A stretch of DNA of 64,000 nt. Source: Macrostomum lignano. Taxonomy: Eukaryota. Below, in pieces: positions 12,693 to 64,000 of the stretch (its first letter is position 1; each line of letters begins with the position of its first letter). The DNA lies in contig NIVC01000212.1 of NCBI GenBank assembly GCA_002269645.1, positions 558,001 through 622,000 of the forward strand. Direction: 5' to 3'. Under the pieces are notes generated by a model. It saw nothing but the letters and a program-made list of their open reading frames with translations. It was not told where the DNA came from and searched no databases. Made by a program: the position numbers and the translations under genes.

Positions 12693-13742
12693 CAATACTA
12701 CCGCCAAATTGATGGTGTCGCTATGGGGTGTCCTCTTGCCCCTACGCTCGCTGATCTGTGCATGAGCCATTGGGAGACTGAATGGATGAAACTCCCCAAT
12801 GCCCCACGGTTTTATAAGCGTTATGTTGACGATACTTTTGCTGTTTTTGACAATAAAAAAGACCACGACGAGTTTCTTACTATTATCAACTCCACCCATC
12901 CAAACATTAAGTTCACCGTTGAGGGCGGAGGGAAGAATCTCCCGTTTCTTGATACCGAGGTTGACTGTTCTGGACACCGTCCTCTTGTGAAATTTTACCG
13001 TAAACCGACGTTTACTAGGCTGATGTTAAGTTTCCATGCTTTATGTCCGACTCACTGGAAATCCGGGTTAGTTAGGTGCCTTCTTCACAGAGCCTACGAG
13101 GTGAGCAGTTCTTGGAGTTTATCTCACCAAGAGGTTCGTGCCCTGACTAAAATCCTTAGATCTAACGGTTACCCTCTCGGTTTTGTCAGCCGTATTATCA
13201 ATTCGTTTGTCACTAAGAAAGTTTCTTGCGATGCGAGACCCAGGCAACCGGAGATAGATTCTTGGGACGCTCTGTTGGTTCTCCCATTTTTTGGCAACGC
13301 TTCGCTTGACTTCAGGAAAAAACTTGAGAAAACGTTTAGCAAATGGCTTAAGTGCACCGTTAGGATTGTGTTTCGCACCGAAAAGATCGGTCGCTATGCT
13401 AGCAGGCTCAAGTCAGCTGTTCCACTTGCTCTAAGGGCTGGTGTTGTTTACCAATTTCGCTGCTCTGAGGATCAGAGCGTTTCCTACATTGGAAAAACGA
13501 AGCGACACCTGCACACTAGAGCTAGGGAACATTGGCTAAAAAGCTCTGCGATTAATGACCATCTGCTTGTTCGTAAAAAATGTTGTGACAGTGAACCGAT
13601 TCAGCTTTTTAAAGTGCTGGATGGGTGCAAATTCGACCATAAGCTTAAGATTATTGAAGCTTCGTATATCAGAATGCACAAACCCAACCTGAATGTGCAG
13701 CTTGCTGGCAATGGGGTGGAGCGTGAGCTAAGAGTACTGTGA
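12693..13742 (+). CDS. Penelope RT (C-terminal half) + GIY-YIG endonuclease, N-terminally truncated
   Basis: Part of ORF 12594-13742. The first ~33 codons come from the inverted pLTR copy and are not genuine RT sequence. Confidence 0.9.
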   Translation, partial: QYYRQIDGVAMGCPLAPTLADLCMSHWETEWMKLPNAPRFYKRYVDDTFAVFDNKKDHDEFLTIINSTHPNIKFTVEGGGKNLPFLDTEVDCSGHRPLVKFYRKPTFTRLMLSFHALCPTHWKSGLVRCLLHRAYEVSSSWSLSHQEVRALTKILRSNGYPLGFVSRIINSFVTKKVSCDARPRQPEIDSWDALLVLPFFGNASLDFRKKLEKTFSKWLKCTVRIVFRTEKIGRYASRLKSAVPLALRAGVVYQFRCSEDQSVSYIGKTKRHLHTRAREHWLKSSAINDHLLVRKKCCDSEPIQLFKVLDGCKFDHKLKIIEASYIRMHKPNLNVQLAGNGVERELRVL

Positions 13743-18462: not shown

Positions 18463-20317
18463 CTACGCTAAGTGTCTAACATGGAATGCGATATTGCTCT
18501 CAGACAGACTCTCAGAGCACTCTAAAACAATATCTACATCTACATGTACATATTGCTTAACGTCGACAGGTAGTGGCTTAAAAATTAAGGTTTTCTTATT
18601 TTTAGTAAAAGTCAGCAAAAAATAAATGTAGAGTTTTTTCGGGCAGCATTTCAGATTTTGTTCCGCGGTTGCCAATATATTTTTTATACATACACGTAAA
18701 TAAGATCTTTGATAAGAATTTTATTTACTTTGAAGTACGAAGCAGCAATAAAAATATTACACATGTACATGTCCGGTACATGTCCAAGAACTTACGTCCA
18801 ATCTTACCAGCTCCAACTCAAAAAATGTTCATTCTCGATCATAAGACAGACGAAAAACATATTACAGGAAGTGAGATCAATATACTTTGTCCCAATCGCA
18901 AAGAGAACTCACCGATACAGGAGTAGTTGACGAACAAGAACTTGAAGTTCATAACGCATGGATCACCAAAGACTTCATTCGTTGCCAACACGTCGCACGA
19001 CTCCTTCTGCTGGCAGGCTGCCCGAACCAGCTGAAGCGACCATGCGCTCCAGCAATCAGTGGCCGTGTCAGTTTCGAGGGTGCAGTGGGGTGCCGAGAAT
19101 TCTTCCGACTTTCCATACAAGGCGAAGTGAACATCGATGGTTGCTAGGAGACCCTGCGGCTGGCTACAGTTCAGTACAGCGACTTCTGACTCGCACACGA
19201 GCACAGAGTGAACGGATGGAGCTGAGAAAAATGGTGCATTTTAATGAATAGATTTATTTATTCAATAGTATGTCAATGCTAACCCTTCATTGTTTACCAA
19301 TCTCCTCTCTCCTCTCCTCTCTCCTCTACTCTGCTCTCCTCTCCTCTCTCCTCTACTCTCCTTTCCTCTCTCCTCTCCTCTCTCCTCTCCTCTCTCCTCT
19401 ACTCTCCTCTCCTCTCCTCTCCTCTCCTCTCTTCTCCTCTCTCCTCTATACTCTACTCTCCTCTCCTCTCTCCTCTCCTCTCTCCTCTACTCTCCTCTCC
19501 TCTCCTCTCCTCTCTCCTCTACTCTCCTCTCCTCCCCTCTCTCCTCTACTCTCCTCTCCTCCCCTCTCTCCTCTACTCTCCTCTCCTCCCCTCTCTCCTC
19601 TACTCTCCTCTCTTCTCCTCTCTCCTCTACTCCCCTCTCCTCTCCTCTCTCCTCTCCTCTCCTCTCTCCTATCCTCTCTCCTCTACTCTCCTCTCCTCTC
19701 CTCTCCTCTCCTCTCTTCTCCTCTCTCCTCTATACTCTACTCTCCTCTCCTCTCTCCTCTCCTCTCTCCTCTCCTCTCTCCTCTACTCTCCTCTCCTCTC
19801 CTCTCTCCTCTCCTCTCTCCTCTACTCTCCTCTCCTCCCCTCTCTCCTCTACTCCCCTCTCCTCTCCTCTCTCCTCTCCTCTCCTCTCTCCTCTCCTCTC
19901 TCCTCTCCTCTCTCCTCTCCTCTCTCCTCTACTATCTCTTCTCCTCTCCTCTCTCCTCTTCTCTCCTCTTTCCTCTCCTCACTCCTCTCCTCCTCTCCTC
20001 CTCCGCTTCTCTCCTCTTTCCTCTCCTCACTCCTCTCCTCCTCTCCTCCTCCGCTTCTCCCTCTCTTACTTCTGCTCTCTCCTATGTTTTCCCTGTCTCC
20101 CCCTCTCTATTCCTCTCATCTTCCTCTTCTCTTCACTCGGCCCTCATGTCTCTCATCTCTCATCTCGCATCTCTTTATTTAATCTCTCCTATCCCTACAG
20201 TCATGAAACACCACTTCAGTAGCAACTGCTGAACATACCGCTGCAGAACACCACAAAGTGGCTAACACAGATCGAACTCGTTAAAAGCACAATCGCAAAA
20301 TTTGAAGAAAATCTCAT
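18463..20317 (-). CDS. secreted SUEL/rhamnose-binding (Gal_Lectin) protein, ~148 aa
   Basis: Signal exon 20317-20239 (MRFSSNFAIVLLTSSICV..., donor G|GTATGT). Phase 1-1 SUEL exon 19221-18913 (CESE..C...ALYGK...C...C...CQQKESC...NEVFGDPC..KFLFVNYSC). The last exon, 18521-18463, is tentative. Confidence 0.75.
19300..20170. repeat. (CTCCT)n-type low-complexity tract in SUEL intron 1
   Basis: Directly visible. Confidence 0.9.
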
Positions 20318-20734
20318 TGTGAAATATTAAATCAGCGGGCTTCAATCTTGAAATGCGTATGAAAAAACCTGGGGATTTTAACATTTGGGGAAATTTTCCC
20401 AGTTGCTAAATACATATGTATGAGACATACGCGCCTATGAGAACAAATGAATGCGCACGTTTTGAAGCAATAGAAATTGAATTACAACGGCTGCTGAGAG
20501 TGAAAACGCTAAAATTGCTTCGATTTTGAGCAGCAAAGCATAAAAATTTTATGCGCTAAAAGAGTTGACATAATTCTGCCATTAATAGTGCCAAAAGCCC
20601 ATTGCGTTTGAAAACAATGAGCTGAAAGCATTTCGCTGTCACCTAGGAGTAACCAGAAAATTTTTCAAGTAAATCGCTTTCAGCGCCTTTTGTTTGAGCA
20701 ATGCACCATATCTCTCTACCCAACACTCCTCAGT

Positions 20735-21720
20735 CCGATTCCACACCTTTCCGATCCCACACCCCTCAATCCCGATCCCACACCCCTCAATCCCGATCCC
20801 ACACCCCTCAATCCCGATCCCACACTCCTCAATCCCGATCCCACACCCCTTAATCCCGACCCCACATATCCTTCAATCTCGATCCCATACCCCTCAATCT
20901 CGATCCCACACTCCTCAATCCCGATCCCACACTCCTCAATCCCGATCCCACACTCCTCAATCCCGATCCCACACCCCTCAATCCCGATCCCACACTCCTC
21001 AATCCCGACCCCACATATCCTTCAATCTCGATCCCACACCCCTCAATCCCGATCCCACACTCCTCAATCCCGATCCCACACTCCTCAATCCCGATCCCAC
21101 ACTCCTCAATCCCGATCCCACACTCCTCAATCCCGATCCCACACCCCTCAATCCCGATCCCACACCCCTCAATCCCGATCCCACACTCCTCAATCCTGAT
21201 CCCACACCCCTCAATCCCGATCCCACACCCCTCAATCCCGATCCCACACCCCTTAATCCCGACCCCACATATCCTTCAATCTCGATCCCATACCCCTCAA
21301 TCTCGATCCCACACCCCTCAATCCCGATCCCACACCCCTCAATCCCGATCCCACACTCCTCAATCCCGATCCCACACCCCTCAATCCCGATCCCACACTC
21401 CTCAATCCCGATCCCACACCCCTCAATCCCGATCCCACACCCCTCAATCCCGATCCCACACTCCTCAATCCCGATCCCACATATCCTTCAATCCCGATCT
21501 CACATATCTCTCTATCCCGATCCCACATATCCCTCAATCCCGATCCCACACCCCTCAATCCCGATCCCACACCCCTCAATCCCGATCCCACACTCCTCAA
21601 TCCCGATCCCACATATCCTTCAATCCCGATCTCACATATCTCTCTATCCCGATCCCACATATCCCTCAATCCCGATCCCACACCTCTCAATCCCGATCCC
21701 ACACCTCTCAATCCCGATCT
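20735..21720. repeat. 21-bp minisatellite (CCCTCAATCCCGATCCCACAC)
   Basis: Directly visible, with periodic variant units. Confidence 0.9.
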
Positions 21721-22129
21721 CAAATATTAGTGAATTTCAAACATTGAAAACTCGTAAAAATAGCTATTTTTTAATAGTCTGAGTACTCGAGTAGCCATGA
21801 CAACAATCAGTTTCAAATGACGCGATTCGTCACTTGCTGGTCAGTGGAAACTACATTCTCATCAGTGATCACGATGTGGTCGCTGAGTACGAAGAATTCG
21901 TTTCCTTTGCTTCCACCGCCGCTGCCGCCAGCGCTGTTGTCGGCGTAGATTTCGTCGTTTTCAATGCCAGCAAGCCCGCTAAGGACTCGACCTCGGCCTG
22001 GTGATGACATGGTTTAGAGAGCTTGCCGGGTATAAATTATCGCCTACTGAAAGTAGTTAAAAAATCTGAAGCGATTGTATTTCAGTGTTGCTGCGCACTC
22101 AGTTAAAAAATGTGGTGTGTCGTGTCCGG

Positions 22130-24504: not shown

Positions 24505-30104
<5,600 letters not shown>

Positions 30105-31196: not shown

Positions 31197-34100
31197 TCAG
31201 AGTTCGTCAACTTTTTCAACCGCAGTCGTCTCAGTGCTGCCGACGTATGAGTTCATCTCGGACTGCACTGTCCCATCAGATTTAAGAGCAAACAGTGCCC
31301 GGAAAATGTAGAGCAGTAGCTCCAGAAGTTCGCATAGGGTGAGTATTGAAACGCCACACCAGAGGCCCAGAATGCCTGCAATTGAAGTTAAAAAATCGCT
31401 GAGACTTAAATGCAAGACATTCTAACACGGTACTTTAATCTGAACATCATGTCGATTACGAGTACCTCCAAAGTCAGCCACTAAGTTCTTTGTGGGGTAG
31501 GCTTCCTCTTCAGAGATCTCCTGAATTTTGGCGCTCCACGCTTTGACTGTCAGCCAGGCGAGACGATTTTGAAGCGCCTCGAGTTCTATGTCAAAGTTGA
31601 GCCTATCACTAGCTGTTTTATTGTCTGACGAAGACTCGGAGTAGCTTTGCACTTTCAGCAATACCTGATAGATATTAGCGAGGCCTCTCATACCGCTGAT
31701 GCTGGTTCTATAGCCAAAGTTCGAGGCCAGCTGTTTGATTAGCTTAACTGATTGGGCATTTTTTAAATTGGGCCACGAATAAGTGACGAATCTGGTACTG
31801 TAGTCATCTGTGCGGCACGGCGGCTGGCACAGCTGGCTGCCTTCGAACTGGTAACGCTGTATCTGTGACACTTGTTCGTTGTAGCAGGTCTCAACAACTC
31901 GAGAGAAATTGCTAATGTCCTTGATGTCGAAACAGTTTTTGTACTTCGTGACTAAAGCCACTGGAATAGGTTGAAACGATGGTAAACACTTGCAGTAGTC
32001 GATAAACTTTTCTACAATGTAGGTGTTAATGCAGTCCTCTCGATCAGAGACAAACTGCCTCTCGGAACCTTTTAAATCACTAAAATGGCAAATTAAGTAC
32101 CTGTTCATCCTTTATTTCAAATAAAGACTCGAATGATATGCAAATTCACTTACATTGTCCCTGCCTTCAATTCAGTCATCTCACGTAGCTTTGTCAGCTT
32201 TTCAGCCCAGTCTGATGAGGCGATTACCGCCCTAGCTGCTCTCTCAATTCTGCAATTATAAAACTGTTTGATTAAAAGAAATCGAACACATAGATGCATA
32301 CGAGATAAACATATTTGAGACTAATTCAAACAGCTCACTTTCCGCCACTATTGGATGAAGCTACATCCCAGGAAGGCAGTCGGTAACTATCCAGTTTTTC
32401 GATCTTCTGACAAGGACTGGATTTAGTGGAGAGTCTTGAGTACTTCTCAAACCTAAGCTGCACGTCCATGCGTTGAGCAGCCGCTATCGCGATACTCCTG
32501 GACGCCCAGGGAAATTTCTTCTCCGGTACAATGATCGCCTGCGGTTTCAGAAACGGCAGAATGAACTCTTTGGCAAAAAGTTTTTAGTAGCATCGTTGAA
32601 AGAATTTCTTACATTTAGCGCCGTATTACTGTCATCGGAGGATGACATCACGCTGTCATGAACAACTTGGTTGAGTTTTTCCATGCCAAATGGAAGCCGA
32701 CCCTTGGAATCTGTCGAGTCGGTGAAGTACATGATTGACAGCTCACTATTCGCCAGCTGCGTACTTGTCATATTGGCGGTAAACTTTTTCTTGAGAAACT
32801 GGTGGCACATGCCAAGCTGGGGGTGCTCAAAATTCACAAAGTGTTCATTGGTGCACTTCTGGCCGGCGAAGCTGCAGCTGGCAAGTGCGATGCTGAGATC
32901 GCTGCCAAATTGACGAGCGAGCAGATGCCTGCCCACAGAGTCTCTGATGGCGCCTGGGACGCTGCGAAATTTAGAATCTGCGACAATGTTTTAAATTAAG
33001 TCTGAAATTAATTGTTTTAATCTGGGATTAATATAATATTAAACGTTCAAAACTCACAGCACAACGCTAAGTTACACGGCTCGAAGGCCATTTCGAAAAG
33101 AGTATGTTGAGAGATTTCTACGCGGTCGATGAAGCGAAGAGCGCGTTCCGGCAAGCAGGCGGGGATCTCAGACTCGAATGCTTTTTGACGCCTGAAATGA
33201 AATTGATTTTTCTCTCTTAGCCTTTTGTTGGAATTGTCAAACAGATAAGATTTAGGATCCTCTGCCTCACTCGAAGTGGCTGTAGTTTTCATTCGCTATG
33301 TCCATCACTATGCTCACTGAGCGGCAGTAGTTGTCCGTACTCGTCTTGGCTACGTCTGGCGTTTCAATTTCCATTTTCAGTAGCCTCCCAACTCCTTAAA
33401 TGCAACGTTTTTTGCAATCCATTTACCATATGCATCGGTTACTGTTTTAGTTAGGCCGTATGAATAAAATTAGCTTTTGTTCCCTAACCCTAATCTAGCA
33501 TGACAAAAGCAACGCCTATCGCGTTCCATTTTCCGACTTCAATGCTCCGATGTCTATGGCAAAAACGAACATGCTGTATAAATGTAAGTATAGAAAGGAA
33601 AAGACAGAAAATTCAACAAAAGAGAGGAGGGAAGACCTTGCAGATCTCGGATCAAACATGCTGTTGAACAGGAGTGTCGCGAACTCAACGCCAACTAGCT
33701 ACGTGGTATTCATTACATTGAGATGTCAGCACGAACGGAAGTGTAGACTAAGCAACTCGGAACAGGATAGTGTTCCATGCATTTGAGCGTATATACAAGG
33801 CAATGCTGACTGCGTTATTAATATTGAGCATTTGTGTTTGTTGTTGTGTGTAACTTTTGGTCCATTCGACGATGCGTGAATTACGAGTATCTATAAATAC
33901 ACTGACTTGTTGTAGATAGTTGTCTATGGTAAAAATACTAGCTTGTCGTAGACAGTTGTCTATGGTAAAAAGTCTGGCTTGTTGTAGACAGTTGTCTATG
34001 GTAAAAACACTAGCTTGTTGTAGACAGTTGACTATGGTAAAAAGTATGGCTAGTTGTAGACAGTTGTCTATGGTAAAAATTCTGGCTGGTTGTAGACATT

Positions 34101-37100
34101 TGTCTATGGTAAAAAGTCCGGCAGCAAAGGATTGAAGAGGGTGGAAATATACGAATCCAAACTTGCAATCGATTGTCAGAGTCTCAGTACGAGCGTAAAG
34201 ACAGAGAGCCAGCATAACTCAAGAAAGCGACTTTGCACGGATACAGTGACCTTCAGTCGATTGCACCAACACACCTGGGAATTATAGCAACAGAATTCGA
34301 TGCTCAGTCATCACTTATGACATAAATTCCTAAACTAGATCAGCACTTGCTCAGCAGTTGATCAATTCAGCTCAAAGTCTGATAAGTTTGAGAACTCAGA
34401 GAAGAAATCGATCCCTCTATTCATACGGCCTATTTCATTTTTACACTGAAAAAATCATTTTGCATCGCATTTCACACCGCGGCTTCTCATGCTCTGCTCT
34501 TGAATGCCGAACAGACGGCCCCAGGCAACGCAGTCCCTTCCAGGAAGCGTGTCGTTCTGCCAGCCGGTGTACATCGACATTCGCTGCCGTTCCGCCGACT
34601 CAGAGCTGGAGCTCACGATACAGTCGTAGCTTTTGGATATGGCTATAATTATAGAAACAGAAACGGGCTGCAAGGATTAGTACAGCAAACACTAGAGAAG
34701 GTAAAATATTTGCTAGAAATTGGCATCCGCCACGTTTACACACTGAAACTACTAGCCTGAGCACTCAACCGATTAAATTTCCTGCCAATCAGTTTCGCTC
34801 AGTTGGTCAATAAGCAAATGCAAGCCTAAGTTTATTTGATCAACACGATCGCTTTTAGTAACTATGGCAATGGCAACGGTAGCCCAGATATATGGCCAAT
34901 TTAGCAGGCGAAAAAAGAATCAAATTATTTATTACGACCGTATTTGATCGGTAAAAGCTACAAGTGGAAGCCAAATATTCCAAATTCATTACTCTAGGTG
35001 TTCTTATTTTTCCAGCTCTGGTGTTGCAGAGGAATTTTACGAGAATAGGAGGGACCGCAACCCTTTGGTGTTTTGGTTGGCGACCCTACCTGTCTCTTGG
35101 TTAGCGCCCCTGTCTCTTGGTGGGCGCCCCTGTCTCTTGGTGGGCGTCCCTGTCTCTTGGTTAGCGCCCCTGTCTCTTGGTGGGCGCCCCTATCTCTTTC
35201 TGGGCGCCACTGTCTCTTGGTGGGCGCCACTGTCTCTTGGTGGGCGCCCCTGTCTCTTGGTGGGCGCCCCTGTCTCTTGGTGGGCGTCCCTGTCTCTTGG
35301 TTAGCACCCCTGTCTCTTGGTGGGCGCCCCTATCTCTTTCTGGGCGCCACTGTCTCTTGGTGGGCGCCACTGTCTCTTGGTGGGCGCCCCTGTCTCTTGG
35401 TTAGGCGCCCCTGTCTGCCTCTTGGTGGGTGCCCCTGTCTCTTTGGTGGACACCCCTGTTTCTTGGTGGGCGCCCTTGTCTCTTGGTGGGCGCCCCTGTC
35501 TCTTGGTGGGCGCCACTGTCTCTTAGTGGTTGCCCCTGTCTCTTAGTGGATGCCCCTGTCTCTTGGTGGGCACCCCTGTCTCTTGGTGGGCGCCCCTGTC
35601 TCTTGGTGGGCGCCACTGTCTCTTAGTGGATGCCCCTGTCTCTTGGTGGGCCCCCTGTCTCTTGGTGGGCACCCCTGTCTCTTGGTGGGCGCCCCTGTCT
35701 CTTGGTGGGTGCCTCTGTCTCTTGGTTAGGCGCCCCTGTCTGCCTCTTGGTGGGCACCCCTGTCTCTTGGTGGGCGCCCCTGTCTCTTGGTGGGCGCCCC
35801 TGTCTCTTGGTTAGCGCCCCTGTCTCTTGGTGGGCACCCCTGTCTCTTGGTGGGCACCCCTGCCTCTTGGTGGGCGCCCCTGTCTCTTTGGTGGACACCC
35901 CTGTCTCTTGGTGGACACCCCTGTCTCTTGGTGGGCACCCCTGTCTCTTGGTGGGCACCCCTGTCTCTTAGTGGATGCCCCTGTCTCTTGGTTAGGCTCC
36001 CCTGTCTCTTAGTGGGCGCCCCTACCCCGGTGGATGCCCGTTCAAGTCTTGTCAAAAGTTGAGTTCCTGCCATTCCTCGGGTTTGTTTACCCCTTTCGTT
36101 TAGATTTTGGAGAAGCCCCATTGTTTCAGGGCGCGCCCCACCCTGGCCACCCTGCAAACGCCATTGATTTTTTCCTATATATTGAATGGGTCTACGATAA
36201 CTGCCTTCCATTCCTCCCCCTGAAATACGATACTTAGCAGTAAAATAAACCAAGAAATTTTATTAGTGCTCCATAAATTTCAGTCACGGTAAACGCCTGA
36301 AACCGTGCGTTCTAGAAGTCATAAAAAATCATACTGCACTATTTACACTGTTTATAGCTAGGTGTGGTAATTAATAGAGTACCCACGCTTACCATTTTTT
36401 CAGGAAATGTTCTGTAAAATATGTCTTTTAGAAGCTAGTCATTACTGTTATTATCTGGGATATCTGACCATGCGGTAACCTGTAAGCTCTGTGTGAAATC
36501 TGGGATTTCCGGCTTTTCCGGCTTTCGATAGGCAGATTTGCACTTCTCTATATTGAACTATTAATTCATGTCGACAAATATACAAAAAAAAAATTTGAAT
36601 ATACGAGAACAAAATTTATATGTTCAGGTGTTGATTTTAAGTGGAATCGTTCACTTGATTAACTTCACTACTTATGTTTGAAGGGTAGCGAATAATGATT
36701 CTCGATATCAGTATTTGCTAAATATCATCGCTGTAGCATTTCTGGCAGTCTAATTTGAACAGGTGCAACCTTATCTATTTAAGGCGTTCTCAAACTCACG
36801 ACAGTAAGGTATGTCGCACAATGCAGCATTCAGTCTGCCGCTCTCATCGTCCGTAAAAAAGCAATAAGGTCCGTCTGAAAATGCCGCTAAGTTGCTGAAG
36901 TTTCCGATGTGCATAGGCTGGCTGTCTGGAAACAAATCAAAGATTTGAGCGTGGGAAATTTCTTTATTAGATTAGTAAGTTACTGTGAAATTGGACTTGC
37001 CGACATCCCGGATCTGCAGGATGACGGCAATGCTACTGTCCGAACCGCAGGTCTGTAAGCGGCTGTTGGCGCACGGTGATGTACAGTTTGTTCGGCTGCT

Positions 37101-38742
37101 GTTGTCAACGCCGTCCAATCGTCCGCACAGGCAGTCGCCACTGGTCACGAGAGCCGCATAAGGGAAATTGTAGCCATCGCAGCACTCGGCGCAAGTCTCA
37201 TGCGCTTTGATGCCGTTCCTGTAGCAGGTGAAGTTGAATGCAGCCGCGGTCGCTGCATCAGTCACGGGGAAGCAGCCGATCTGTTGAAGCTTAGGACCTA
37301 AAGCGAGTAGTTTAGAAGGCAAAAGTTGTTTAGAAAACAGCCGGTTGGGATATTAGAAATATTCTTAACAGTAGGAATACCAAACCATTTCTTAGAAAGT
37401 AATTTAAAAATTACTTGCTGGCTAGCTAACTTTTTGTTGGCCAGCTTCTCTAACAAGAATCAAGTCGCCAGCCCTCCGGACCGTTGAGGCATTGAAAAGT
37501 TCAGCAAGAAGATCGGATTTTTCATCAATGCAGCCTTGGCAAGTCTCTAAATTTTATAAGAACGTCGACCAAATGTGTTTGTGTCAGATCTGACGTCGCA
37601 ATTCGCCGGATTTCACCCAGGCGGAGCTTTGGAGCTTCCCATTGCGAATTTCTCTGATGTCTCTGATCAAGCCTCGACACAAACCTGTACTGCTAGGTAT
37701 CCTCAACTAGTCTCTCAAGCATTCAGTCATCATCCAGACGCCATCAGCACCTTCAACCGGGGGCGGATTCCCCCTATGATAGTTCTACTGTTAATTACGA
37801 GGTTTAAGCTAAGAGGTTTTGTTGAATTACTCACGAGTTGCTATGGGTAGAAACATCGACAGAGGCAAACCAGGAGGAGAGCGGCATCGAGTCTCATTGT
37901 CCGAGAAGTGAAGGGACAGCAGGCTCGCAGCCAGGCTGGCCTCGCCTCTGCTCTGCAGCATCCGAGCTGCATCGTTCCATCTCATACACGGTCTCCTAGT
38001 GATGTAGGGCTTAAAACTCGGGACAGCTGTGTAGTTGAAGTACCTTGTGTCGTTGAAGTCCAGCCGAACTGTTGAGTACCCGTAGACCACAGCCGAGCTG
38101 ACGTTGCCTGTGTAATCATTGCCAGTGAGACTGGTTCGGCAATCCAAATCTTGGCCTACGGTTTTCAATGGAATTTTTCTAAAAGTTAGTCGTACTGACA
38201 TTAATGAATGTTTATTATAAGCAACTTTTATTAATTATGTTAAACTTGCCGTTAAGAGGCACCTGTAACGACTTCAACAGCGATTCCTCGGTGCTTCGAA
38301 TAACATCTAGAAATGCTTTGGTCGGCTCGTTCAGTACAGAATCAGTTTTTTTGGATAGATCAAAGCTGTAGAATTCGATTTTTTCGCTTGTGTTCTTCTT
38401 AGTAAGATGCTCCATGTTCTCAATATTGAAGGTTGTCAACTTTTCTACCATGCGACTGGCCGTGATGGCCCGGGCGGGACAGATGTACACATCCGGGAAC
38501 TGGAACTTCAACGAGGACATGCTCATGCTGGTCATCACTGGGGCCTGAAGGAACCTTTCAAACAAAGTGGACAGGTGATAGGCAAACCCACTGTAGGTGC
38601 CTAGCAGGAATAAGACCCAGATGAGCCTGCCAACTTGGCTGGACTGCTCAGAGAATCTGCCAAGTCCGTGAGCAGTTGTGTAGCCACAGAAACTGCTCAC
38701 TGGTGCGCTCAGCTTCCGTGATGCGGAGCTGTAGCTACTCAT
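31197..38742 (-). CDS. DEG/ENaC (amiloride-sensitive channel family) subunit with kringle and WSC domains in the ectodomain, ~1031 aa
   Basis: 12 phase-compatible exons: 38742-38250, 38155-37835, 37297-37001, 36925-36800, 34642-34478, 33394-33271, 33191-33076, 32977-32613, 32538-32339, 32249-32154, 32079-31466 and 31375-31197 (3096 nt in total). Motifs: TTAHG (HG motif), TM1, FPDVYIC, SCSFAGQKC..F.HPQLGMCHQF, a Cys-rich thumb, and VADFGGILGLWCGVS (TM2, GxS filter). Introns 1 and 3 require GC donors. Confidence 0.8.
33076..34642 (-). CDS. channel exons 5-7: second, degenerate kringle
   Basis: YDC...MYTGWQNDTLPGRDCVAW | ...TPDVAKTSTDNYCRS... | ...EIPAC. Confidence 0.6.
33900..34115. repeat. 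36-bp minisatellite in channel intron 5
   Basis: GTTGTAGACAGTTGTCTATGGTAAAAA... about 6 copies. Confidence 0.85.
35085..36020. repeat. ~21-bp minisatellite (CCTGTCTCTTGGTGGGCGCCC) in channel intron 4
   Basis: Same family as the array at 9605-10050. Confidence 0.9.
36800..36925 (-). CDS. channel exon 4: kringle 1, C-terminal half (Cys4-6)
   Basis: DGPYCFFTDDESGRLNAALCDIPYC matches GPWCYT...CDIP.C; TTTCCAG acceptor and GTGAGT donor; phase 1-1. Too short for the ORF track. Confidence 0.8.
37001..37297 (-). CDS. channel exon 3: WSC domain
   Basis: IGCF...TCAECC...YAAL..SGDCLCG...NCTSPC...QTCGS; phase 1-1 exon of 297 nt. Confidence 0.85.
37835..38155 (-). CDS. channel exon 2: kringle 1, N-terminal half (Cys1-3)
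   Basis: DCRTSLTGNDYTGNVS...PCMRW...FSDNETRCRSP matches the kringle pattern C..G.DY.G...C..W...CR.P; phase 1-1 exon. Confidence 0.75.
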
Positions 38743-42255: not shown

Positions 42256-43082
42256 TCTATGAATACTTCGTATTACTTTGAAATAATCCGTGTGGACATT
42301 TTAACACACTGCAATGAAAAATCATTGTTCTTATGGCTTGGGAGATGCAAACACACTGTATGATTTCCACGTGAGTGAGGCATTCAATTGAAGCCTGCAA
42401 CAATGGACTGAAAAGGCAGTGAGTACATACTCGTACTCGTACGAGCGTACATGGGCTTCAATAAGCCTCGTAAATATTTTTCCAACTCTCTATTGTTGTT
42501 GCTGCTGCCACTAGAATGGAAAAAAAATTGATCAACACAGAAGCTACGGCACCATTGGAAAGATGTGCCGGTCATGTGAGCCGCTTTGAAAGAGCAGGAG
42601 AGTATAATCAAAGAAAAACATTGGTTGAAAAGCGCGGTTTTGTCGGAAGGGTAAAAACAATGGGACGTGTATAGTTTCTGAGCGCTCAGTTGGGCTCAAC
42701 TAGGTCCCAGAAGAGGACGCTGGGAAAAAGGCGGCTGGCTGAGGTCTGGGATGTGGAAACTCCCAGATGGAGAGAGTTTGGAGAAATTGGAGACGGGCAG
42801 AGCAATGGGCTGAGAATAAAATATGGAAATACAGGGAGAATTGATGGCTAATGCTGGCTTTGGCAAACGGACGAACAATGAGAAAGTGGTGGGGATTTAT
42901 GATAGGTTCAGAGAAATAAAAAGGTGAATAGCCACATCACAAAGACGTTCCTATTGGTCCTGATCTAAGAAGCATAAGAGAATCCACACAGCTCTAACGG
43001 TATAAATTATTACTACCTTTTTTATTAGTGACCAGGTGTTGCAAATGTTAGAGTTCCAAGAATAATTCAATTGCTGATAACA

Positions 43083-43413
43083 ATGACTCTAATTACCCGG
43101 CTTCTTTTTCTTAGCTGCTCGCTGTCTGTCTCCATGGCAGCCCTGGCAATTGTATGCGAAAATGATACAATGACGGCCGACTGCGCAACCCAGGTGATTT
43201 CCGTTTCCATAGCAACATTCGGCAAGTCGAGCATGTTCTCCGCCTCGTGTCCGAACCAGTCGCCGACTGAGTGCAACAGCGGCACCGCCTACGGTCTGAT
43301 CAGCGACGCATGCGAGGGCCAGAACAGCTGCTCGATGGCCGCGAGTAAAGCGCTGTTTGGCGATCCGTGTCCCGGATACGAGAGCTACATGGTGCTGTAC
43401 TACAGCTGTACAG
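43083..43413 (+). CDS. secreted SUEL/rhamnose-binding lectin, first exon
   Basis: Signal-like MTLITRLLFLSCSLSVSMA, then CEND...C...ATFGK...C...C...CEGQNSC...LFGDPCPGYESYMVLYYSC; donor AG|GTAAGG. Downstream exon not resolved. Confidence 0.8.
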
Positions 43414-43496
43414 GTAAGGCATTAAGGTTGTAACGGTACAAATGATGGATTTTCAAACGGGTGCCATTTTTTGTTCGGTCCTTTTTTATGGTTATG

Positions 43497-45181: not shown

Positions 45182-46411
45182 ATGGAGGGCACAATGTTTT
45201 TCACACTTCGTCAGGCCAATTGCACGCCGGAGTTTCGTCGGGCAGCCTACAATCCCTCGGACACTGTCCGGGTGACCATCTACAGCTTGACAGTGTTGCA
45301 GGCCGCCATTCTGCCTGTTGGGGCTGCCCTCAACATTGCCTGTTTTGCTACCCTGCTGCGCTATCCACTTGGCGCTGAGGTGAACGGACACTTTGTGAGT
45401 TTCAGCGTCTGCGATACAGCGTTTCTCCTGTTTAATCTGCTCGACACCATCAGCCATTGTGTCGAGAACTCAACACCGTTGACTGACGGTCCGGAACCCT
45501 TCAACTACATTGCCTATGTCCATCCGATTGCGTGGACACTGCGCAGTGTGGTGTACACTGCTCACAGTTGGCAGACGGTGCTGCTCAGCGGCCTCAAATG
45601 GCTACGCATCTGCCGGCCGCTGTCGGCCCTGCCAGAGTCCAGAATTCGCCACCTCATCGGGCTTGTATGGCTGTACAGTCTGGTCACCAGCATTCCACCG
45701 ATTCTGCTGTTCCAAGCATTTGTCACGGTTCTGTATGCCAACTGCCATGACCAGGGCTTTCGGGTCGCCGGCAGCGGTTATCACCGACTCTACAGCATTG
45801 ACAACAGTGGAGACGTCGGTGGCGGCATCATACCGCCCGCCATTCCACCGTCATTTGTCGCCGTGAACGCGTCCTTGCTGCCGGCGCTTATCTGCCTGAT
45901 CTGCAGTCTGGGCATCGTGTGGCGCCTGCGACACCCAGTCCTGCATCATCTACGGCGTCGCCGGCATCTCCGTCGGCAAGAAAACCACTTCCTGGATCCT
46001 GGCGCAGCTCGGCTAGGCCGCGAGGCCACTCGCGCAGTGCTCATGTCGGCTAACAGTTTCCTGCTCTTCCAAATCCCGATGGTTATCTGGACACTGGTGG
46101 ACACCTGGTACTGGAAGCTGCTGCAGCCGGCGGTCTTCTCTATGCTCGTTGTAGTCAGCAACACAATCAGCCAAGCATTCTTTGCGGTGGACCTGTCGGT
46201 GTGTCTTCACAGCAATCACCAGTTTTCTAGCAACCTTCGAAGATACCTGCAGCCGTTTTGCAAGTGCAGAAAGCACTTCAAGCAGCAAAAACAGCAGCAG
46301 AAGCAGTGCAACAAGCAGTTTGAGCTTCGACGACTTCGAGGCTTTTCGGACTGCAATGGCGTGGAAGAGCAGGCCGGGACCTTCTCTATCTGCAGCTCAA
46401 CTCTGATCTGA
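45182..46411 (+). CDS. intronless divergent rhodopsin-class 7TM receptor (peptide-receptor-like), 409 aa
   Basis: Seven hydrophobic segments; TM1 LN, TM2 SVCD, ICL2 ICRPL, TM4 W..S..P, TM6 FLLFQIP; CKC near the C-terminal tail. Confidence 0.75.
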   Translation: MEGTMFFTLRQANCTPEFRRAAYNPSDTVRVTIYSLTVLQAAILPVGAALNIACFATLLRYPLGAEVNGHFVSFSVCDTAFLLFNLLDTISHCVENSTPLTDGPEPFNYIAYVHPIAWTLRSVVYTAHSWQTVLLSGLKWLRICRPLSALPESRIRHLIGLVWLYSLVTSIPPILLFQAFVTVLYANCHDQGFRVAGSGYHRLYSIDNSGDVGGGIIPPAIPPSFVAVNASLLPALICLICSLGIVWRLRHPVLHHLRRRRHLRRQENHFLDPGAARLGREATRAVLMSANSFLLFQIPMVIWTLVDTWYWKLLQPAVFSMLVVVSNTISQAFFAVDLSVCLHSNHQFSSNLRRYLQPFCKCRKHFKQQKQQQKQCNKQFELRRLRGFSDCNGVEEQAGTFSICSSTLI

Positions 46412-48176: not shown

Positions 48177-49037
48177 TCATTCGATAGTGAAATTCAGAAA
48201 TGGATCTAAGCATTCGCAGGCTCCGTGATACGAATATGAATTTACATTGTCATACAGAGCCATGTTGCGGATTCTAGCGCGCAATCCAGCATCATTGCCA
48301 TTGTTTGGCTCCCCAGGCCTCCAGAGTCCACCTCTGCCGGTGTCCAGAACCGGCAGCGGCCAGTCGCAGTCCGCCCACGCCCAGCTGCCGTTGGCCAGAT
48401 TCAAGGCGCCAACCCAGATCTGCTGACTGCTAGTAACACCAGTTGACGTCCTCACATCATGGAGCTCCTCGACGCTGCTCAGGTCGGCGAGCTTCGTCAG
48501 CGGCATGGCGGACCCGTCCGAGGTGGTCAGGAAGCTCCGGCAGCTGTCGGCCTGAGCGCTCCAGTCGGCCTCCTGCCCGTTCCCAGCAGCCTTGTACAGC
48601 GAGCCCTTGAAGCGGCTGCCGCTGACGCCGGGCACCCAGCGATAGTCGGCGGGACAGAGCCGGCCCGGCTCGAGACCCTCCGACCGCTTGACGAAGACTC
48701 GAAGCCTCCTGCTGCTGCAGCCGCTGCTCGCCATCAAGCCGGGATCGAGCAGCAGTCGCGAGCTGCAGGCGTCGAAGGCGAACAGCAGGCAGAGCTGTCG
48801 GTCCGAGGCGGCCGCTGCAGCCTCCATGACGAAGGCTCTGCACCTCGGAGCCGCTCCACAGCGAAGCGCACAGGCCGCGATGTCAAGGTCGAGCAGCTGG
48901 TAGTGAGCTGGGGACACGCAGTTGGAGGTGAGGATCGGGTGGAAGGCGACTCGCTGCCTGCAGCAGGCGGCGGGGCGGCTCAGCAGCAGCAGCGGCAGCA
49001 GCAGCAAAGAAATAAACTGGGATTTATGGTGGCTCAT
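48177..49037 (-). CDS. secreted PAN/apple + C-type lectin domain protein
   Basis: Single ORF: Leu-rich signal peptide, PAN pattern (C..RC...PRCRAF...C.L), then CTLD features (W..A..C, LA, WVG, W.W, W..GEPN). Confidence 0.75.
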   Translation of the reverse strand: MSHHKSQFISLLLLPLLLLSRPAACCRQRVAFHPILTSNCVSPAHYQLLDLDIAACALRCGAAPRCRAFVMEAAAAASDRQLCLLFAFDACSSRLLLDPGLMASSGCSSRRLRVFVKRSEGLEPGRLCPADYRWVPGVSGSRFKGSLYKAAGNGQEADWSAQADSCRSFLTTSDGSAMPLTKLADLSSVEELHDVRTSTGVTSSQQIWVGALNLANGSWAWADCDWPLPVLDTGRGGLWRPGEPNNGNDAGLRARIRNMALYDNVNSYSYHGACECLDPFLNFTIE

Positions 49038-49428
49038 GAGAGATGCCTGCAAATCCCGGGGCTAAAGCGATAGCGATGCATTGTAGGAAAAATACAACTT
49101 TTGCTATTAGTAGCGAATAAATTGCTATTATGCAATTGTGATTAAGAATTAAGATACATATATATGTAGCTACTTTTAATTTGACTGACACATGACTGCG
49201 AGTAGCCAATTTGAAAATCCAATTAGTTCCATCTTAATAGAACTGTACAGGTGTGAGCTTTCTCAATACAATGGATTTTTTTCGTAATTTTCTTCACAGA
49301 TACACAAAACTTGGAGTGGAGTCCTAGAGAATTAAAGAAAACCCTGAAACTGCTCAGCCATGCCCAAGCCACAAATTCTATGCGCGCTAGATGGGCCTCT
49401 CCCTTTTGTGTAAAGCCACTTTGCCACT

Positions 49429-50115
49429 GTCTATGGTTGGACTCGGTCTGCCTGCAGTCTTCGCCAGTGTCTATGGTTGGACTCGGTCTGCCTGCAGTCT
49501 TCGCCAGTGTCTATGGTTGGACTCGGTCTGCCTGCAGTCTTCGCCAGTGTCTATGGTTGGACTCGGTCTGCCTGCAGTCTTCGCCAGTGTCTATGGTTGG
49601 ACTCGGTCTGCCTGCAGTCTTCGCCAGTGTCTATGGTTGGACTCGGTCTGCCTGCAGTCTTCGCCAGTGTCTATGGTTGGACTCGGTCTGCCTGCAGTCT
49701 TCGCCAGTGTCTATGGTTGGACTCGGTCTGCCTGCAGTCTTCGCCAGTGTCTATGGTTGGACTCGGTCTGCCTGCAGTCTTCGCCAGTGTCTATGGTTGG
49801 ACTCGGTCTGCCTGCAGTCTTCGCCAGTGTCTATGGTTGGACTCGGTCTGCCTGCAGTCTTCGCCAGTGTCTATGGTTGGACTCGGTCTGCCTGCAGTCT
49901 TCGCCAGTGTCTATGGTTGGACTCGGTCTGCCTGCAGTCTTCGCCAGTGTCTATGGTTGGACTCAGTCTGCCTGCAGTCTTCGCCAGTGTCTATGGTTGG
50001 ACTCGGTCTGCCTGCAGTCTTCGCCAGTGTCTATGGTTGGACTCAGTCTGCCTGCAGTCTTCGCCAGTGTCTATGGTTGGACTCGGTCTGCCTGCAGTCT
50101 TCGCCACTGTCTATG
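49429..50115. repeat. 40-bp highly homogeneous minisatellite, ~17 copies
   Basis: Unit GTCTATGGTTGGACTCGGTCTGCCTGCAGTCTTCGCCAGT. Confidence 0.95.
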
Positions 50116-50670
50116 GTAAGGCACGTACAGTTTCTGTGTCTTGGAGTCTGGTCCTCACGGGTGCGAATCGCATGACAACATCCCCAAGGCCAATATTAGT
50201 GCACACAGGTCGCAAATAAATGTGACCAGAATCCAACCATTGGTCGTGGTGAGTGATTGGACTGATAAACTGTTCTTGCTAAAAAACGGCTTCGGTTACC
50301 GGAGTTCCTTTGTTTTAAACGATTTTATTTGAGTTTTACGTGTAGATTAATTATCGTGATGTTCTAGAAAATGACAGAAGTATAGAAATTCTACTCGTGA
50401 CAAATGTTCTGAGCTTTTTAAGAAGTTCAGACACTCAAATTAACACATGCCCTCCTTTCTCATTGCTGATTTCATTTCGATTTGTCAATTGATTTATCAA
50501 TATTTTATCGAATAATAATTTAATGTCAATCAATTTTTGCTTTATTTTTAAAAAAGTCTGAAATTGCAGTTTTAAATGTTTATCATAGTGTAGCTAAACA
50601 GATTTCGGCTTGTAATTTCCCTTCACACATGCCGCAGTTACTAAAAAGTCGTGGTGACGCCACCAAACTG

Positions 50671-63806: not shown

Positions 63807-64000
63807 GTCAGTTTTTATCGATTTTTTAGTGCTAATCATGTACATCAAATCTTTGAATCTTCGAACGCTTAAATTTTCTATTTATTCAGCGGTTGTTGTC
63901 TCTGTGCTATGTGCTTTGGAACGTGGAATTAGTCAATTATACATTCCCACTTTCTTATACTTTATCTTTTCATCCTTATCTGATCTCCGCACCTCTCCTC

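What the first reader, a model, noticed from the sequence alone, without database searches (positions are those of the whole stretch)
31197..38742. DEG/ENaC channel with a Kringle-WSC-Kringle cassette inserted in its finger domain
Seen in the sequence: the HG-motif/TM1 exon lies only 94 nt upstream of a kringle exon on the same strand, and 12 exons chain in phase to TM2 (3096 nt, ~1031 aa). About 380 aa of kringle and WSC modules sit between FPDVYIC and the SCSFAG..C segment. Established: this is the hypervariable finger region, which carries the protease-released inhibitory tracts of ENaC and contributes to peptide binding in FaNaC. Kringles bind lysine or proteins; WSC domains bind glycans or act in surface sensing; kringle plus WSC occur together in Kremen. 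Inference: a channel subunit with a built-in ligand, glycan or matrix sensor. I do not know of a characterised DEG/ENaC with this architecture, but I could not search databases.
Basis: partly seen in the sequence, partly recalled or inferred. Interest (0 to 1): 0.9.

Follow-up and report, generated by a model that had tools for sequence, protein, structure and literature searches.

The report
Flatworm sodium channel with kringle-WSC insert
This is an intact gene of the flatworm Macrostomum lignano for a DEG/ENaC-type sodium channel subunit whose outer "finger" region carries a built-in block of about 385 amino acids made of binding modules (two kringle-like domains and a sugar-binding WSC domain), an architecture found only in this species so far and never studied.

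Summary
On the minus strand, 38742-31197, twelve exons chain in phase (3114 nt, 1037 aa). Exon sizes and all eleven intron phases match a paralogous M. lignano gene whose model comes from RNA-seq.

The product is a DEG/ENaC subunit (Pfam ASC 138.6 bits; HG motif, FPDVYIC, GVS filter). A cassette of about 389 aa (aa 165-553, six exons, bounded by phase-1 introns) sits in the finger.

The cassette order is not Kringle-WSC-Kringle. Kringle 1 is interrupted by a WSC domain between its third and fourth cysteines, and an expanded kringle 2 follows. Pfam does not call the kringles. Profile-profile comparison does (98% and 97.5% probability). The WSC fold is confirmed on a paralogue model.

All 22 cassette cysteines are conserved in four full-length paralogues, and the cassette is about as conserved as the channel core. 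About ten paralogue lineages share the architecture. All are M. lignano, even after a search of 1.84 billion proteins. No paper describes it.

Function is inferred: a rigid, glycosylated glycan- or matrix-binding crown that tethers or tunes gating. Transcript proof for this particular copy is missing. It is a new variant of a known kind.

The parts
38250..38742 (-). Exon 1 (aa 1-164): N-terminus, HG motif (AHG, aa 24-26), TM1, FPDVYIC (aa 82-88) and the first part of the finger. Ends in phase 1.
   Evidence: Pfam ASC E 6e-18, profile positions 1-123. Aligns to FaNaC1 residues 8-112. Donor options are listed; the model is. With the alternative GT donor the exon would end at 38274.
37835..38155 (-). 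Exon 2 (aa 165-271): N-terminal part of kringle 1 (Cys1 C170, Cys2 C221, Cys3 C255; motifs CRTSLTGNDYTGN, CMRW, RCRSPPG), with an insertion of about 30 aa.
   Evidence: hhalign of this part alone against 22 canonical kringles: E 2.7e-5. With the C part added: probability 98%, E 1.9e-12. The cysteines are invariant in the paralogues.
36997..37297 (-). Exon 3 (aa 272-371): WSC domain with 10 cysteines, nested inside kringle 1. An alternative, stronger donor (ACA|GTAACT, exon end 36988) paired with the acceptor at 36916 is also in frame.
   Evidence: Pfam WSC E 3e-7, 31.0 bits on the exon ORF, but 25.3 bits in the full protein. Paralogues score 39-43 bits. The model of the paralogue cassette matches yeast Wsc1 (TM 0.78-0.79) and Kremen1.
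36800..36921 (-). Exon 4 (aa 372-412): C-terminal part of kringle 1 (GPYCFF Cys4 C392, Cys5 C407, Cys6 C412; CDIPYC).
   Evidence: hhalign E 6.9e-7 alone. The PDB profile search matches it to the C-terminal ends of kringles from plasminogen, Kremen1, ROR1/2 and neurotrypsin. Same length (122 nt) as the exon in the P0002 gene.
34478..34642 (-). Exon 5 (aa 413-467): kringle 2, part a (Cys1 C420, YTG, Cys2 C450, W).
   Evidence: In the PDB profile search all 60 hits are kringle proteins, best E 0.0019. Kringle HMM positions 9-64 align to aa 436-497. 165 nt, as in P0002.
33271..33394 (-). Exon 6 (aa 468-508): kringle 2, part b (DNYCRS, Cys3 C491). The truncated database model P0001 starts here, at M 33374.
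   Evidence: tblastn of P0001 is 100% identical over 33374-33270. hhalign of kringle 2: probability 97.5%, E 2.6e-11.
33058..33191 (-). Exon 7 (aa 509-553): kringle 2, part c (Cys4 C521, Cys5 C548, Cys6 C553; CNLALC). Ends in phase 1, so the cassette as a whole is bounded by phase-1 introns.
   Evidence: 134 nt, as in P0002.
32613..32977 (-). Exon 8 (aa 554-675): return to the channel; the end of the finger and SCSFAGQKC...GMCHQF.
   Evidence: P0001 is 100% identical. Aligns to FaNaC1 residues 171-198.
32339..32538 (-). Exon 9 (aa 676-741): extracellular channel core.
   Evidence: 200 nt, as in P0002.
32154..32249 (-). Exon 10 (aa 742-773): a 96-nt exon (IERAARAVIASSDWAEKLTKLREMTELKAGT). Model P0001 leaves it out, but it is present in P0002 and P0163.
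31466..32079 (-). Exon 11 (aa 774-978): cysteine-rich thumb, and palm.
   Evidence: Pfam ASC E 8e-12. Cysteines are invariant in alignment A6.
31197..31375 (-). Exon 12 (aa 979-1037 plus the stop codon): TM2 with GILGLWCGVSILTLCELLE (GVS at aa 986-988) and the C-terminus.
   Evidence: Pfam ASC E 4e-7. Aligns to FaNaC1 TM2. Hydropathy peak at aa 973-1010.
35089..36023 (.). 20-nt satellite (46 copies) that inflates intron 4 to 2157 nt. It is not coding.
   Evidence: The matching intron in P0002 is 89 nt.
33894..34115 (.). 36-nt tandem repeat (6 copies) inside intron 5 (1083 nt).

Best explanation
What is shown. The locus is an intact 12-exon gene of Macrostomum lignano for a 1037-aa DEG/ENaC channel subunit. 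It belongs to a species- or genus-restricted subfamily. In that subfamily six exons, bounded by phase-1 introns, insert a disulfide-rich extracellular cassette of about 389 aa into the finger domain. The insertion point falls between Pfam ASC profile positions about 123 and 147. This is the variable part of the finger. From prior knowledge, ENaC keeps its protease-released inhibitory tract in this region and FaNaC binds its peptide here.

The cassette has three modules:
- a divergent kringle interrupted by a WSC domain between its third and fourth cysteines;
- the WSC domain itself;
- a second kringle with long insertions.

What is inferred. The subunit most likely assembles into a trimeric cation channel, because the HG motif, both TM segments, the GxS filter and the thumb cysteines are intact. 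Each subunit would then project a rigid, heavily N-glycosylated kringle/WSC module from the top of the finger. This crown would bind an extracellular glycan or matrix/mucus partner through the WSC and the variable kringle 2. Because it is anchored to the finger at both ends, it would pass ligand binding or mechanical pull to the finger-thumb gating interface. In short, it would be a built-in tether or ligand sensor. The roughly ten divergent paralogues suggest sensory diversification.
For: Gene structure:
- Its phases are identical and its exon sizes near-identical to the P0002 gene, whose introns are only 74-179 nt.
- P0013 shows the same exon boundaries.
- GenBank BOX15_ models come only from RNA-seq transcript assemblies cut at trans-splice sites (PMC5730564). 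In P0002 and P0013 the channel N-terminus, the cassette and the channel C-terminus are therefore one transcribed ORF.
- The truncated model of this locus (P0001, 100% identical) already joins the kringle-2 exons to the channel C-terminus.

Channel identity:
- Pfam ASC 138.6 bits.
- The best solved relatives are FaNaC1 and Aplysia FaNaC, then ENaC, ASIC and PPK.

Modules:
- WSC.
- Kringles. In the reverse direction, the cassette profile hits bona fide multi-kringle proteins at E 1e-17 to 1e-24.

Constraint:
- All 22 cassette cysteines are conserved in four full-length paralogues.
- Cassette identity is 48/46/33% against 56/53/35% for the channel core.
- The cassette has 10 N-glycosylation sequons.

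Rigidity: AlphaFold2 on the P0013 cassette gives pLDDT 83.9 and pTM 0.79.

Analogy (established knowledge): WSC of yeast Wsc1 is a cell-surface mechanosensor domain, and Kremen1 is a rigid Kringle-WSC-CUB ligand receptor (abstracts of PMC9024836 and PMC5014086).
Against: - There is no transcript evidence for this copy. Its database model and those of two ~96%-identical copies (P0001, P0163, P0164) all start in exon 6. The exon 1 to exon 5 linkage here rests on homology with the paralogues.
- Two junctions use weak or non-canonical donors: exon 1 (GC-AG or GTCGTT) and exon 3 (GTCCAA, with GTAACT as an alternative).
- Introns 4 and 5 are swollen by satellites.
- Pfam does not call Kringle.
- Foldseek recognised only the WSC and Kremen1, not an isolated kringle.
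- The model is of a paralogue only 33% identical to this cassette, and I had no coordinates to check the disulfides.
- The acidic pair of the kringle lysine-binding site is absent.
- No binding partner, expression site or current is known. The function is inference only.
Confidence: 0.6

Rival explanations
1. Annotation or reading artefact: the kringle/WSC exons belong to a separate gene nested in a long intron of an ordinary DEG/ENaC gene.
For: Exon 1 (phase 1) could splice directly to exon 8 (which starts in phase 1) and stay in frame, giving a conventional channel of about 648 aa. Database models of this locus lack exons 1-5. About 7% of M. lignano transcription units are polycistronic (PMC5730564).
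Against: In P0002 the whole cassette sits between channel exons with introns of 82-179 nt, in an RNA-seq-derived single ORF. The same holds for P0013 and P0156. The first cassette exon starts in phase 1 and has no signal peptide or usable start. P0001 joins kringle-2 exons to channel exons. About ten loci keep the same order.
Confidence: 0.04
2. The architecture is real in the family, but this particular copy is a decaying or silent duplicate in a neopolyploid genome.
For: Two junctions have weak donors. There are satellite-filled introns of 2.2 and 1.1 kb where the paralogue has 82-89 nt. No full-length model of this copy exists in the protein collections. The assembly is highly redundant (PMC5730564).
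Against: All 12 exons are open with no frameshift or stop. All 22 cassette cysteines and all channel motifs are intact. Two other ~96%-identical copies keep the same open C-terminal half.
Confidence: 0.12
3. The cassette is an autoinhibitory or protease-controlled plug, like the ENaC GRIP domain, with the kringles docking a protease. It would not be a ligand or matrix sensor.
For: It is inserted in the same part of the finger that holds the ENaC inhibitory tracts (plus established knowledge). Kringles are classic modules of protease zymogens.
Against: There is no furin-type RX[KR]R site anywhere in the protein and there are only two RxxR motifs. The cassette is a compact, disulfide-locked, conserved fold, not a short excisable tract.
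Confidence: 0.1
4. The cassette has a purely structural role, in subunit assembly, sorting or stabilisation of hetero-trimers among the paralogues, and takes no part in gating.
For: Kringle 1 is as conserved as the channel core (56-62% against 56% with P0002), as expected for a docking scaffold. The high pTM suggests a rigid block.
Against: WSC and kringle 2 diverge faster (25-43%), as expected for surfaces that meet varying partners. The finger is a gating-coupled region in ASIC, ENaC and FaNaC (established knowledge).
Confidence: 0.14

Closest known systems
FaNaC and related peptide-gated DEG/ENaC channels (PDB 8on7, 7yvb)
   Same: They are the best solved sequence relatives of the channel core (E 2.3e-15 and 3.2e-14). 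They share the HG motif, TM1, the FPxVxIC motif and a GxS TM2. Their finger is the ligand-binding region.
   Different: FaNaC has a short helical finger with no added modules. The three M. lignano channels tested for FMRFamide by Dandamudi et al. have different N-termini and are not this subfamily.
ENaC alpha/gamma GRIP domain
   Same: It is an extra regulatory element inserted in the finger that controls gating from outside.
   Different: GRIP is a beta-strand element with furin-released inhibitory tracts. Here the insert is 389 aa of kringle/WSC modules, and no furin consensus is present.
Kremen1/2 (Kringle-WSC-CUB Wnt co-receptors)
   Same: It is the only well-known protein family that combines kringle and WSC, and its modules pack rigidly. 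Kremen1 structures are among the top Foldseek matches (E about 1e-4).
   Different: In Kremen the modules follow one another and are followed by a CUB domain and a single TM helix. Here the WSC is nested inside a kringle, there is no CUB, a second kringle follows, and the whole block sits inside an ion channel.
Yeast Wsc1 cell-wall integrity sensor
   Same: Its WSC fold is the best structural match (TM 0.78-0.79 normalised to the target). It is a surface mechanosensor that contacts glycans.
   Different: It is a fungal single-pass sensor and not part of a channel.
C. elegans MEC-4/MEC-10 and EGAS proteins (from memory, not tested here)
   Same: They are DEG/ENaC subunits with extra cysteine-rich extracellular regions or an added EGF domain. 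MEC-4 is thought to be gated through links to the matrix.
   Different: In the MEC-4 system the matrix-binding modules (EGF, Kunitz) lie on separate proteins. No DEG/ENaC with a kringle or WSC has been described.

Membership tests
DEG/ENaC (Pfam ASC, PF00858) | Significant match to the family profile | tested here: met
   138.6 bits against a cut-off of 23.6, E 4.2e-40, in three stretches interrupted by the cassette.
DEG/ENaC (Pfam ASC, PF00858) | Two TM helices flanking a large extracellular loop; HG motif before TM1; FPxVTxC after TM1 | tested here: met
   AHG at aa 24-26 and FPDVYIC at aa 82-88. The TM1 region aligns to FaNaC1 residues 8-112 and TM2 to residues 471-531. The hydropathy peak is at aa 973-1010.
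DEG/ENaC (Pfam ASC, PF00858) | GxS selectivity-filter motif in TM2 and conserved thumb cysteines | tested here: met
   GVS at aa 986-988, aligned to the GIS of FaNaC. The thumb cysteines are invariant in four paralogues.
DEG/ENaC (Pfam ASC, PF00858) | Forms a trimeric, amiloride-sensitive cation channel | not testable with these tools
   Needs expression and electrophysiology.
Kringle (PF00051) | Match to the curated Pfam profile at its cut-off | tested here: not met
   No hit in the window protein or in its isolated kringle segments. Two paralogues give 14.8-16.1 bits against a cut-off of 34.3.
Kringle (PF00051) | Six-cysteine pattern with the Y-x-G, C-x-x-W, CR-x-P, GP[WY]C and C-x4-C motifs; homology by profile comparison | tested here: met
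   hhalign against 22 canonical kringles: kringle 1 without the WSC scores probability 98%, E 1.9e-12 over the whole template; kringle 2 scores 97.5%, E 2.6e-11. hmmsearch E 3.4e-10 and 4.9e-9. In the PDB profile search of kringle 2, all 60 hits are kringles. In the reverse direction the cassette profile hits multi-kringle proteins.
Kringle (PF00051) | Contiguous module of about 80 aa with disulfides 1-6, 2-4 and 3-5 | tested here: inconclusive
   Kringle 1 is split by about 110 aa of WSC. Kringle 2 spans 134 aa with insertions. The disulfide pairing could not be read because no model coordinates were available.
Kringle (PF00051) | Lysine-binding pocket (the acidic pair in CRNPDxD). This defines only the lysine-binding subset. 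| tested here: not met
   The aligned segments are RCRSPPGL (kringle 1) and NYCRSVSI (kringle 2). Neither has an acidic pair.
WSC (PF01822) | Match to the Pfam profile at its cut-off | tested here: inconclusive
   31.0 bits on the exon ORF, but 25.3 bits in the full protein, against a cut-off of 27.8. Paralogues score 39.1-43 bits.
WSC (PF01822) | WSC fold | tested here: met
   The AlphaFold2 model of the paralogue P0013 cassette (pLDDT 83.9) matches Wsc1 7pz2 (E 1.5e-5, TM 0.78) and Kremen1. This was tested on a paralogue, not on the window protein.
Kremen | Linear Kringle-WSC-CUB ectodomain on a single-pass receptor | tested here: not met
   There is no CUB hit, the WSC is nested in a kringle, and the host is a two-TM channel.
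ENaC GRIP-type finger insert | Furin-type sites flanking an inhibitory tract | tested here: not met
   No RX[KR]R motif in the protein.

The most novel reading that the evidence does not exclude
This would be a self-contained tethered channel. A rigid lectin-like crown, made of a kringle with a WSC nested in one of its loops plus a second kringle, would be fused into the gating finger of each DEG/ENaC subunit. It would bind matrix or mucus glycans directly, so that pull or glycan binding opens or tunes the pore. The roughly ten paralogues would form a sensory repertoire. Because the cassette is bounded by phase-1 introns, skipping it stays in frame and could switch the sensor on or off.
Probability: 0.25. 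Interest if true: 0.85.

Novelty: new variant of a known kind. Interest (0 to 1): 0.66.

Why it matters
DEG/ENaC channels are gated from the outside by protons, peptides, proteases and force. How force or matrix contact reaches the gate is still debated, and the proposed tethers lie on separate proteins or on glycans. Here evolution has fused candidate tether or ligand modules directly into the gating-coupled finger, and has kept them under constraint in about ten paralogues. M. lignano has transgenesis and an annotated genome.

This gives a natural construct for testing tether- or ligand-driven gating, by comparing the channel with and without the cassette or by swapping cassettes between paralogues. 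It is also a rare case of one extracellular module (WSC) nested inside another (kringle).

The limits are that it is known from a single species and that no function has been measured.

Tried and rejected
- Pfam on single ORF pieces and on the full model gave no Kringle call.
- The PDB profile search of kringle 1 without the WSC gave only marginal hits: best E 0.18, with 13 of 20 hits being kringles.
- The first AlphaFold2 run, with a 5-row alignment, was unusable (pLDDT 48.9). I replaced it with a 58-row alignment that adds WSC and kringle segments.
- The spliced window protein may not be submitted to the representative search or to structure prediction, so paralogue sequences were used instead.
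- An exact look-up of P0001 found no contig.
- Exact exon threading of P0013 failed. tblastn was used instead.
- The obvious strong donor after exon 1, CAG|GTGCCT, is out of phase with every nearby acceptor, so I rejected it.
- A profile search with the channel core alone found only M. lignano proteins again. No cassette-free sister group could be named.
- Literature searches for ENaC with kringle or WSC, for Macrostomum with degenerin, and for the gene identifiers found nothing on this family.
- The three M. lignano channels tested in PMC9234716 are different genes.

Full report
**Origin and context.** The window is from the flatworm Macrostomum lignano. The best protein hit (P0001, UniProt A0A1I8HKR9, 'Degenerin unc-8') is 100% identical to window exons 6-12. 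All other hits are M. lignano proteins. The finding's coordinates are exactly the coding span of a minus-strand gene, with ATG at 38742 and the stop codon ending at 31197.

**Checking the observation.** Pfam finds the DEG/ENaC family profile (ASC) in three places: the first ORF (E 6e-18, profile positions 1-123), the large C-terminal ORF (E 8e-12) and the TM2 ORF (E 4e-7). It finds WSC in the ORF at 37352-36975 (E 3e-7, 31.0 bits against a cut-off of 27.8).

tblastn of ten M. lignano paralogues gives colinear matches only between 38781 and 31200. I used them as guides to build a 12-exon model of 3114 nt / 1037 aa. The exons are:
- 38742-38250
- 38155-37835
- 37297-36997
- 36921-36800
- 34642-34478
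- 33394-33271
- 33191-33058
- 32977-32613
- 32538-32339
- 32249-32154
- 32079-31466
- 31375-31197

The introns are 94, 537, 75, 2157, 1083, 79, 80, 74, 89, 74 and 90 nt.

I threaded the paralogue P0002 (1049 aa) exactly onto its own locus (L001, GenBank assembly GCA_002269645.1). It has 13 exons, all with GT-AG introns, of which the first eleven are 74-179 nt. Its first eleven intron phases are 1,1,2,1,1,2,1,0,2,2,1, identical to the window gene. Five exons have the same length in both genes (122, 165, 134, 200 and 96 nt). The deeper paralogue P0013 shows the same protein-level exon boundaries. This agreement is far beyond chance.

Two in-phase 94-nt introns exist after exon 1. I prefer the GC-AG one (G|GCAAGT), because it keeps the phase and position of the P0002 intron. 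The strongest-looking donor, CAG|GTGCCT, is out of phase with every acceptor. The two long introns are inflated by tandem repeats: a 20-nt unit in 46 copies and a 36-nt unit in 6 copies.

**Is it one gene?** The GenBank BOX15_ gene models of this assembly are not ab initio predictions. They are ORFs of RNA-seq-based transcript assemblies, and their boundaries were cut at experimentally found trans-splice and poly(A) sites (PMC5730564). P0002, P0013, P0156, P0008 and P0010 are such models. In the full-length ones (P0002, P0013, P0156) the channel N-terminus, the cassette and the channel C-terminus form one ORF.

In P0002 the cassette exons are separated from the channel exons by introns of 82-179 nt, which leaves no room for a separate gene. 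The first cassette exon starts in phase 1 and has no usable start codon or signal peptide. The truncated model of this very locus joins kringle-2 exons to the channel C-terminus.

What is missing is direct transcript evidence for exons 1-5 of this copy. P0001 and two ~96%-identical copies (P0163, P0164) all start in exon 6.

**What the cassette is.** An alignment of six paralogues (35-49% identity) shows invariant cysteines and motifs in this order:
- C..G..Y.G, C..W and RCR.P;
- a WSC domain;
- GPYCF, C and C.IP.C;
- a second set: DC, YTG..N.T..G..C..W, DNYCR, P.C and C....C.

Pfam calls no kringle in the window protein, and gives only 14.8-16.1 bits in two paralogues. I therefore tested the claim in four other ways.
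1. A profile of kringle 2 searched against PDB sequences returns 60 hits. All are kringle proteins (prothrombin, ROR1, tPA, HGF, uPA, apo(a), plasminogen), with best E 0.0019.
2. A profile of the whole cassette was searched with HMMER against 1.84 billion representative proteins. It hits proteins at E 1e-17 to 1e-24 through positions 211-321. The ten I checked by Pfam are all bona fide multi-kringle proteins.
3. I took 22 canonical kringles from five of those proteins and built an HMM. It scores the window's kringle 1 (WSC removed) at E 3.4e-10 and kringle 2 at E 4.9e-9. In the full protein the matches are colinear: HMM 1-15 to aa 170-184 and HMM 21-62 to aa 219-259 before the WSC, then HMM 44-88 to aa 367-412 after it.
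4. hhalign in global mode aligns kringle 1 without the WSC to the whole kringle template with probability 98% (E 1.9e-12). The two halves alone give E 2.7e-5 and 6.9e-7. Kringle 2 gives 97.5% (E 2.6e-11).

So the cassette is a kringle interrupted by a WSC between Cys3 and Cys4, followed by an expanded second kringle. It is not a linear Kringle-WSC-Kringle. The C-terminal half of kringle 1 may descend from a different ancestral kringle than the N-terminal half: it keeps an N-F-S where N-[FY]-C would be. This cannot be decided from sequence.

**Structure.** A first AlphaFold2 run on a 5-row alignment failed (pLDDT 48.9). The second used a 58-row alignment of M. lignano paralogues plus WSC and kringle segments from the representative hits. 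With it, the cassette of paralogue P0013 folds at pLDDT 83.9 and pTM 0.79, which indicates a compact multi-module block.

Foldseek against the PDB gives yeast Wsc1 WSC (E 1.5e-5, TM 0.78-0.79 relative to the target) and four Kremen1 entries (E 1e-4 to 3e-4) as the only matches at E ≤ 0.001. A WSC-bearing glyoxal oxidase follows at E 2.6e-3. The WSC fold is thus confirmed on a paralogue. The kringle fold was not recovered as a separate hit, and I had no coordinates to check the disulfides.

**Where it sits in the channel.** Pfam ASC positions 1-123 lie before the cassette, and positions from about 147 lie after it. With the cassette removed, the core aligns best to FaNaC1 (8on7, E 2.3e-15) and Aplysia FaNaC (7yvb). 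The pre-cassette part matches FaNaC1 residues 8-112 and the SCSFAGQKC segment matches residues 171-198. The insertion is therefore in the variable part of the finger. From established knowledge, this is the region that holds the GRIP/inhibitory tracts in ENaC and contributes to peptide binding in FaNaC.

The channel motifs are intact: AHG (aa 24-26), FPDVYIC (aa 82-88), GVS in TM2 (aa 986-988) and the thumb cysteines.

**Constraint.** All 22 cysteines of the window cassette are conserved in four full-length paralogues. Identity to P0002/P0003/P0013 is 48/46/33% in the cassette and 56/53/35% in the channel. Kringle 1 is the most conserved part (56-62% with P0002) and kringle 2 the least (25-42%). 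The cassette carries 10 N-glycosylation sequons, as expected for an extracellular module.

**Distribution and novelty.** In the representative search, every hit covering the cassette as a whole or as a contiguous multi-module piece is from M. lignano (P0003, P0006, P0008, P0010, P0012, P0013, P0015, P0030). The others I checked are pure multi-WSC or pure multi-kringle proteins. A profile of the channel core alone also finds only M. lignano proteins.

The subfamily has about ten paralogue lineages. They are annotated at most as 'WSC domain-containing protein'. Full-text searches found no paper on a DEG/ENaC with kringle or WSC, and none on these gene identifiers. The three M. lignano DEG/ENaCs expressed by Dandamudi et al. 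(PMC9234716) have different N-termini and are other genes.

**How it most likely works (inference).** The cassette is bounded by phase-1 introns. This is the classical signature of a shuffled extracellular module set, and it also means that skipping the cassette (exon 1 to exon 8) would stay in frame.

The insert enters and leaves the finger at neighbouring points, it is rigid, and it is conserved. In a trimer, three such modules would form a glycosylated crown at the top of the extracellular domain. WSC domains bind glycans and act in surface mechanosensing (Wsc1). Kringle and WSC together form a rigid ligand-binding platform in Kremen1 (abstracts).

Two details argue against two alternative ideas. 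The acidic pair of the kringle lysine-binding site is absent, which argues against lysine-type ligands. No furin-type site is present, which argues against an ENaC-like proteolytic switch.

My best reading is a built-in glycan- or matrix-binding tether or ligand sensor that transmits binding or pull to the finger-thumb gating interface, diversified across the paralogues. I rate the architecture at about 0.9 and this mechanism at about 0.3-0.35.

**Rivals:**
- a nested separate gene (about 0.04);
- a silent or decaying copy at this locus (about 0.12);
- a protease-controlled plug (about 0.1);
- a purely structural or assembly role (about 0.14).

**Verdict.** This is a new variant of a known kind. 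It is interesting to channel biologists because it offers a natural test of tethered or ligand-driven gating. It is limited by single-species distribution and by the absence of any functional or expression data.

Noticed in passing
window 35089-36023 and 9488-10100: The 20-nt satellite (CCTGTCTCTTGGTGGGCGCC, 46 copies) that fills intron 4 of the channel gene appears to recur about 25 kb away. The spurious ORFs there have the same repeated translations (PRDRGAHQETGAPTKRQGR / PVSWWAPLSLGGRPCLLVGA).
   Followed up: partly
window 12594-13742 (+): A 382-aa ORF with a reverse-transcriptase domain (E 6e-8) followed by a GIY-YIG endonuclease domain (E 5e-6). This is the domain pair of Penelope-like retroelements.
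   Followed up: partly
window 18839-19204 (-) and 43071-43433 (+): Two separate ORFs each encode a SUEL-type galactose/rhamnose-binding lectin domain (E 3.5e-16 and 1.5e-15). They are probably exons of larger genes on either side of the channel gene.
   Followed up: partly
window 25588-30104 (+): Exons of an RPE65/carotenoid-oxygenase family gene lie just downstream of the channel gene, on the opposite strand (Pfam RPE65 E 1.2e-16 for 26707-27171).
   Followed up: partly
window 45182-46411 (+) and 6259-7068 (+): Two ORFs give weak rhodopsin-family 7TM matches, both below the Pfam cut-off (23.8 and 28.1 bits against 30.5). They are possibly divergent, intron-poor GPCR genes.
   Followed up: partly
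window 63221-63829 (+), 10083-10622 (-), 48177-49052 (-): Further neighbours: an IST1 (ESCRT-III regulator) exon (E 2e-24), a DXD glycosyltransferase exon (E 5e-14), and an ORF with a weak PAN-domain match that also shows a C-type-lectin-like WxxxxPGEPNN motif (and reading).
   Followed up: partly
window 2037-3182, 5793-6392, 19270-21782, 26138-26518, 49311-50219, 50998-51425, 52392-53481, 54540-55043: The window is dense in tandem repeats that create long spurious ORFs on both strands. These coincide with strong GC-skew excursions at 18-22 kb and 52-54 kb.
   Followed up: no
window 32154-32249 (exon 10): The database model P0001 omits this 96-nt exon. The paralogue P0002 and the ~96% copy P0163 include it. 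Skipping it stays in frame, so it may be alternatively spliced or simply missed by the annotation.
   Followed up: partly
proteins P0001, P0163, P0164: Three ~96-100%-identical truncated models all start at the same internal methionine in exon 6. This suggests at least three near-identical copies in the neopolyploid genome, and a systematic break of the older gene models at the repeat-filled introns.
   Followed up: partly
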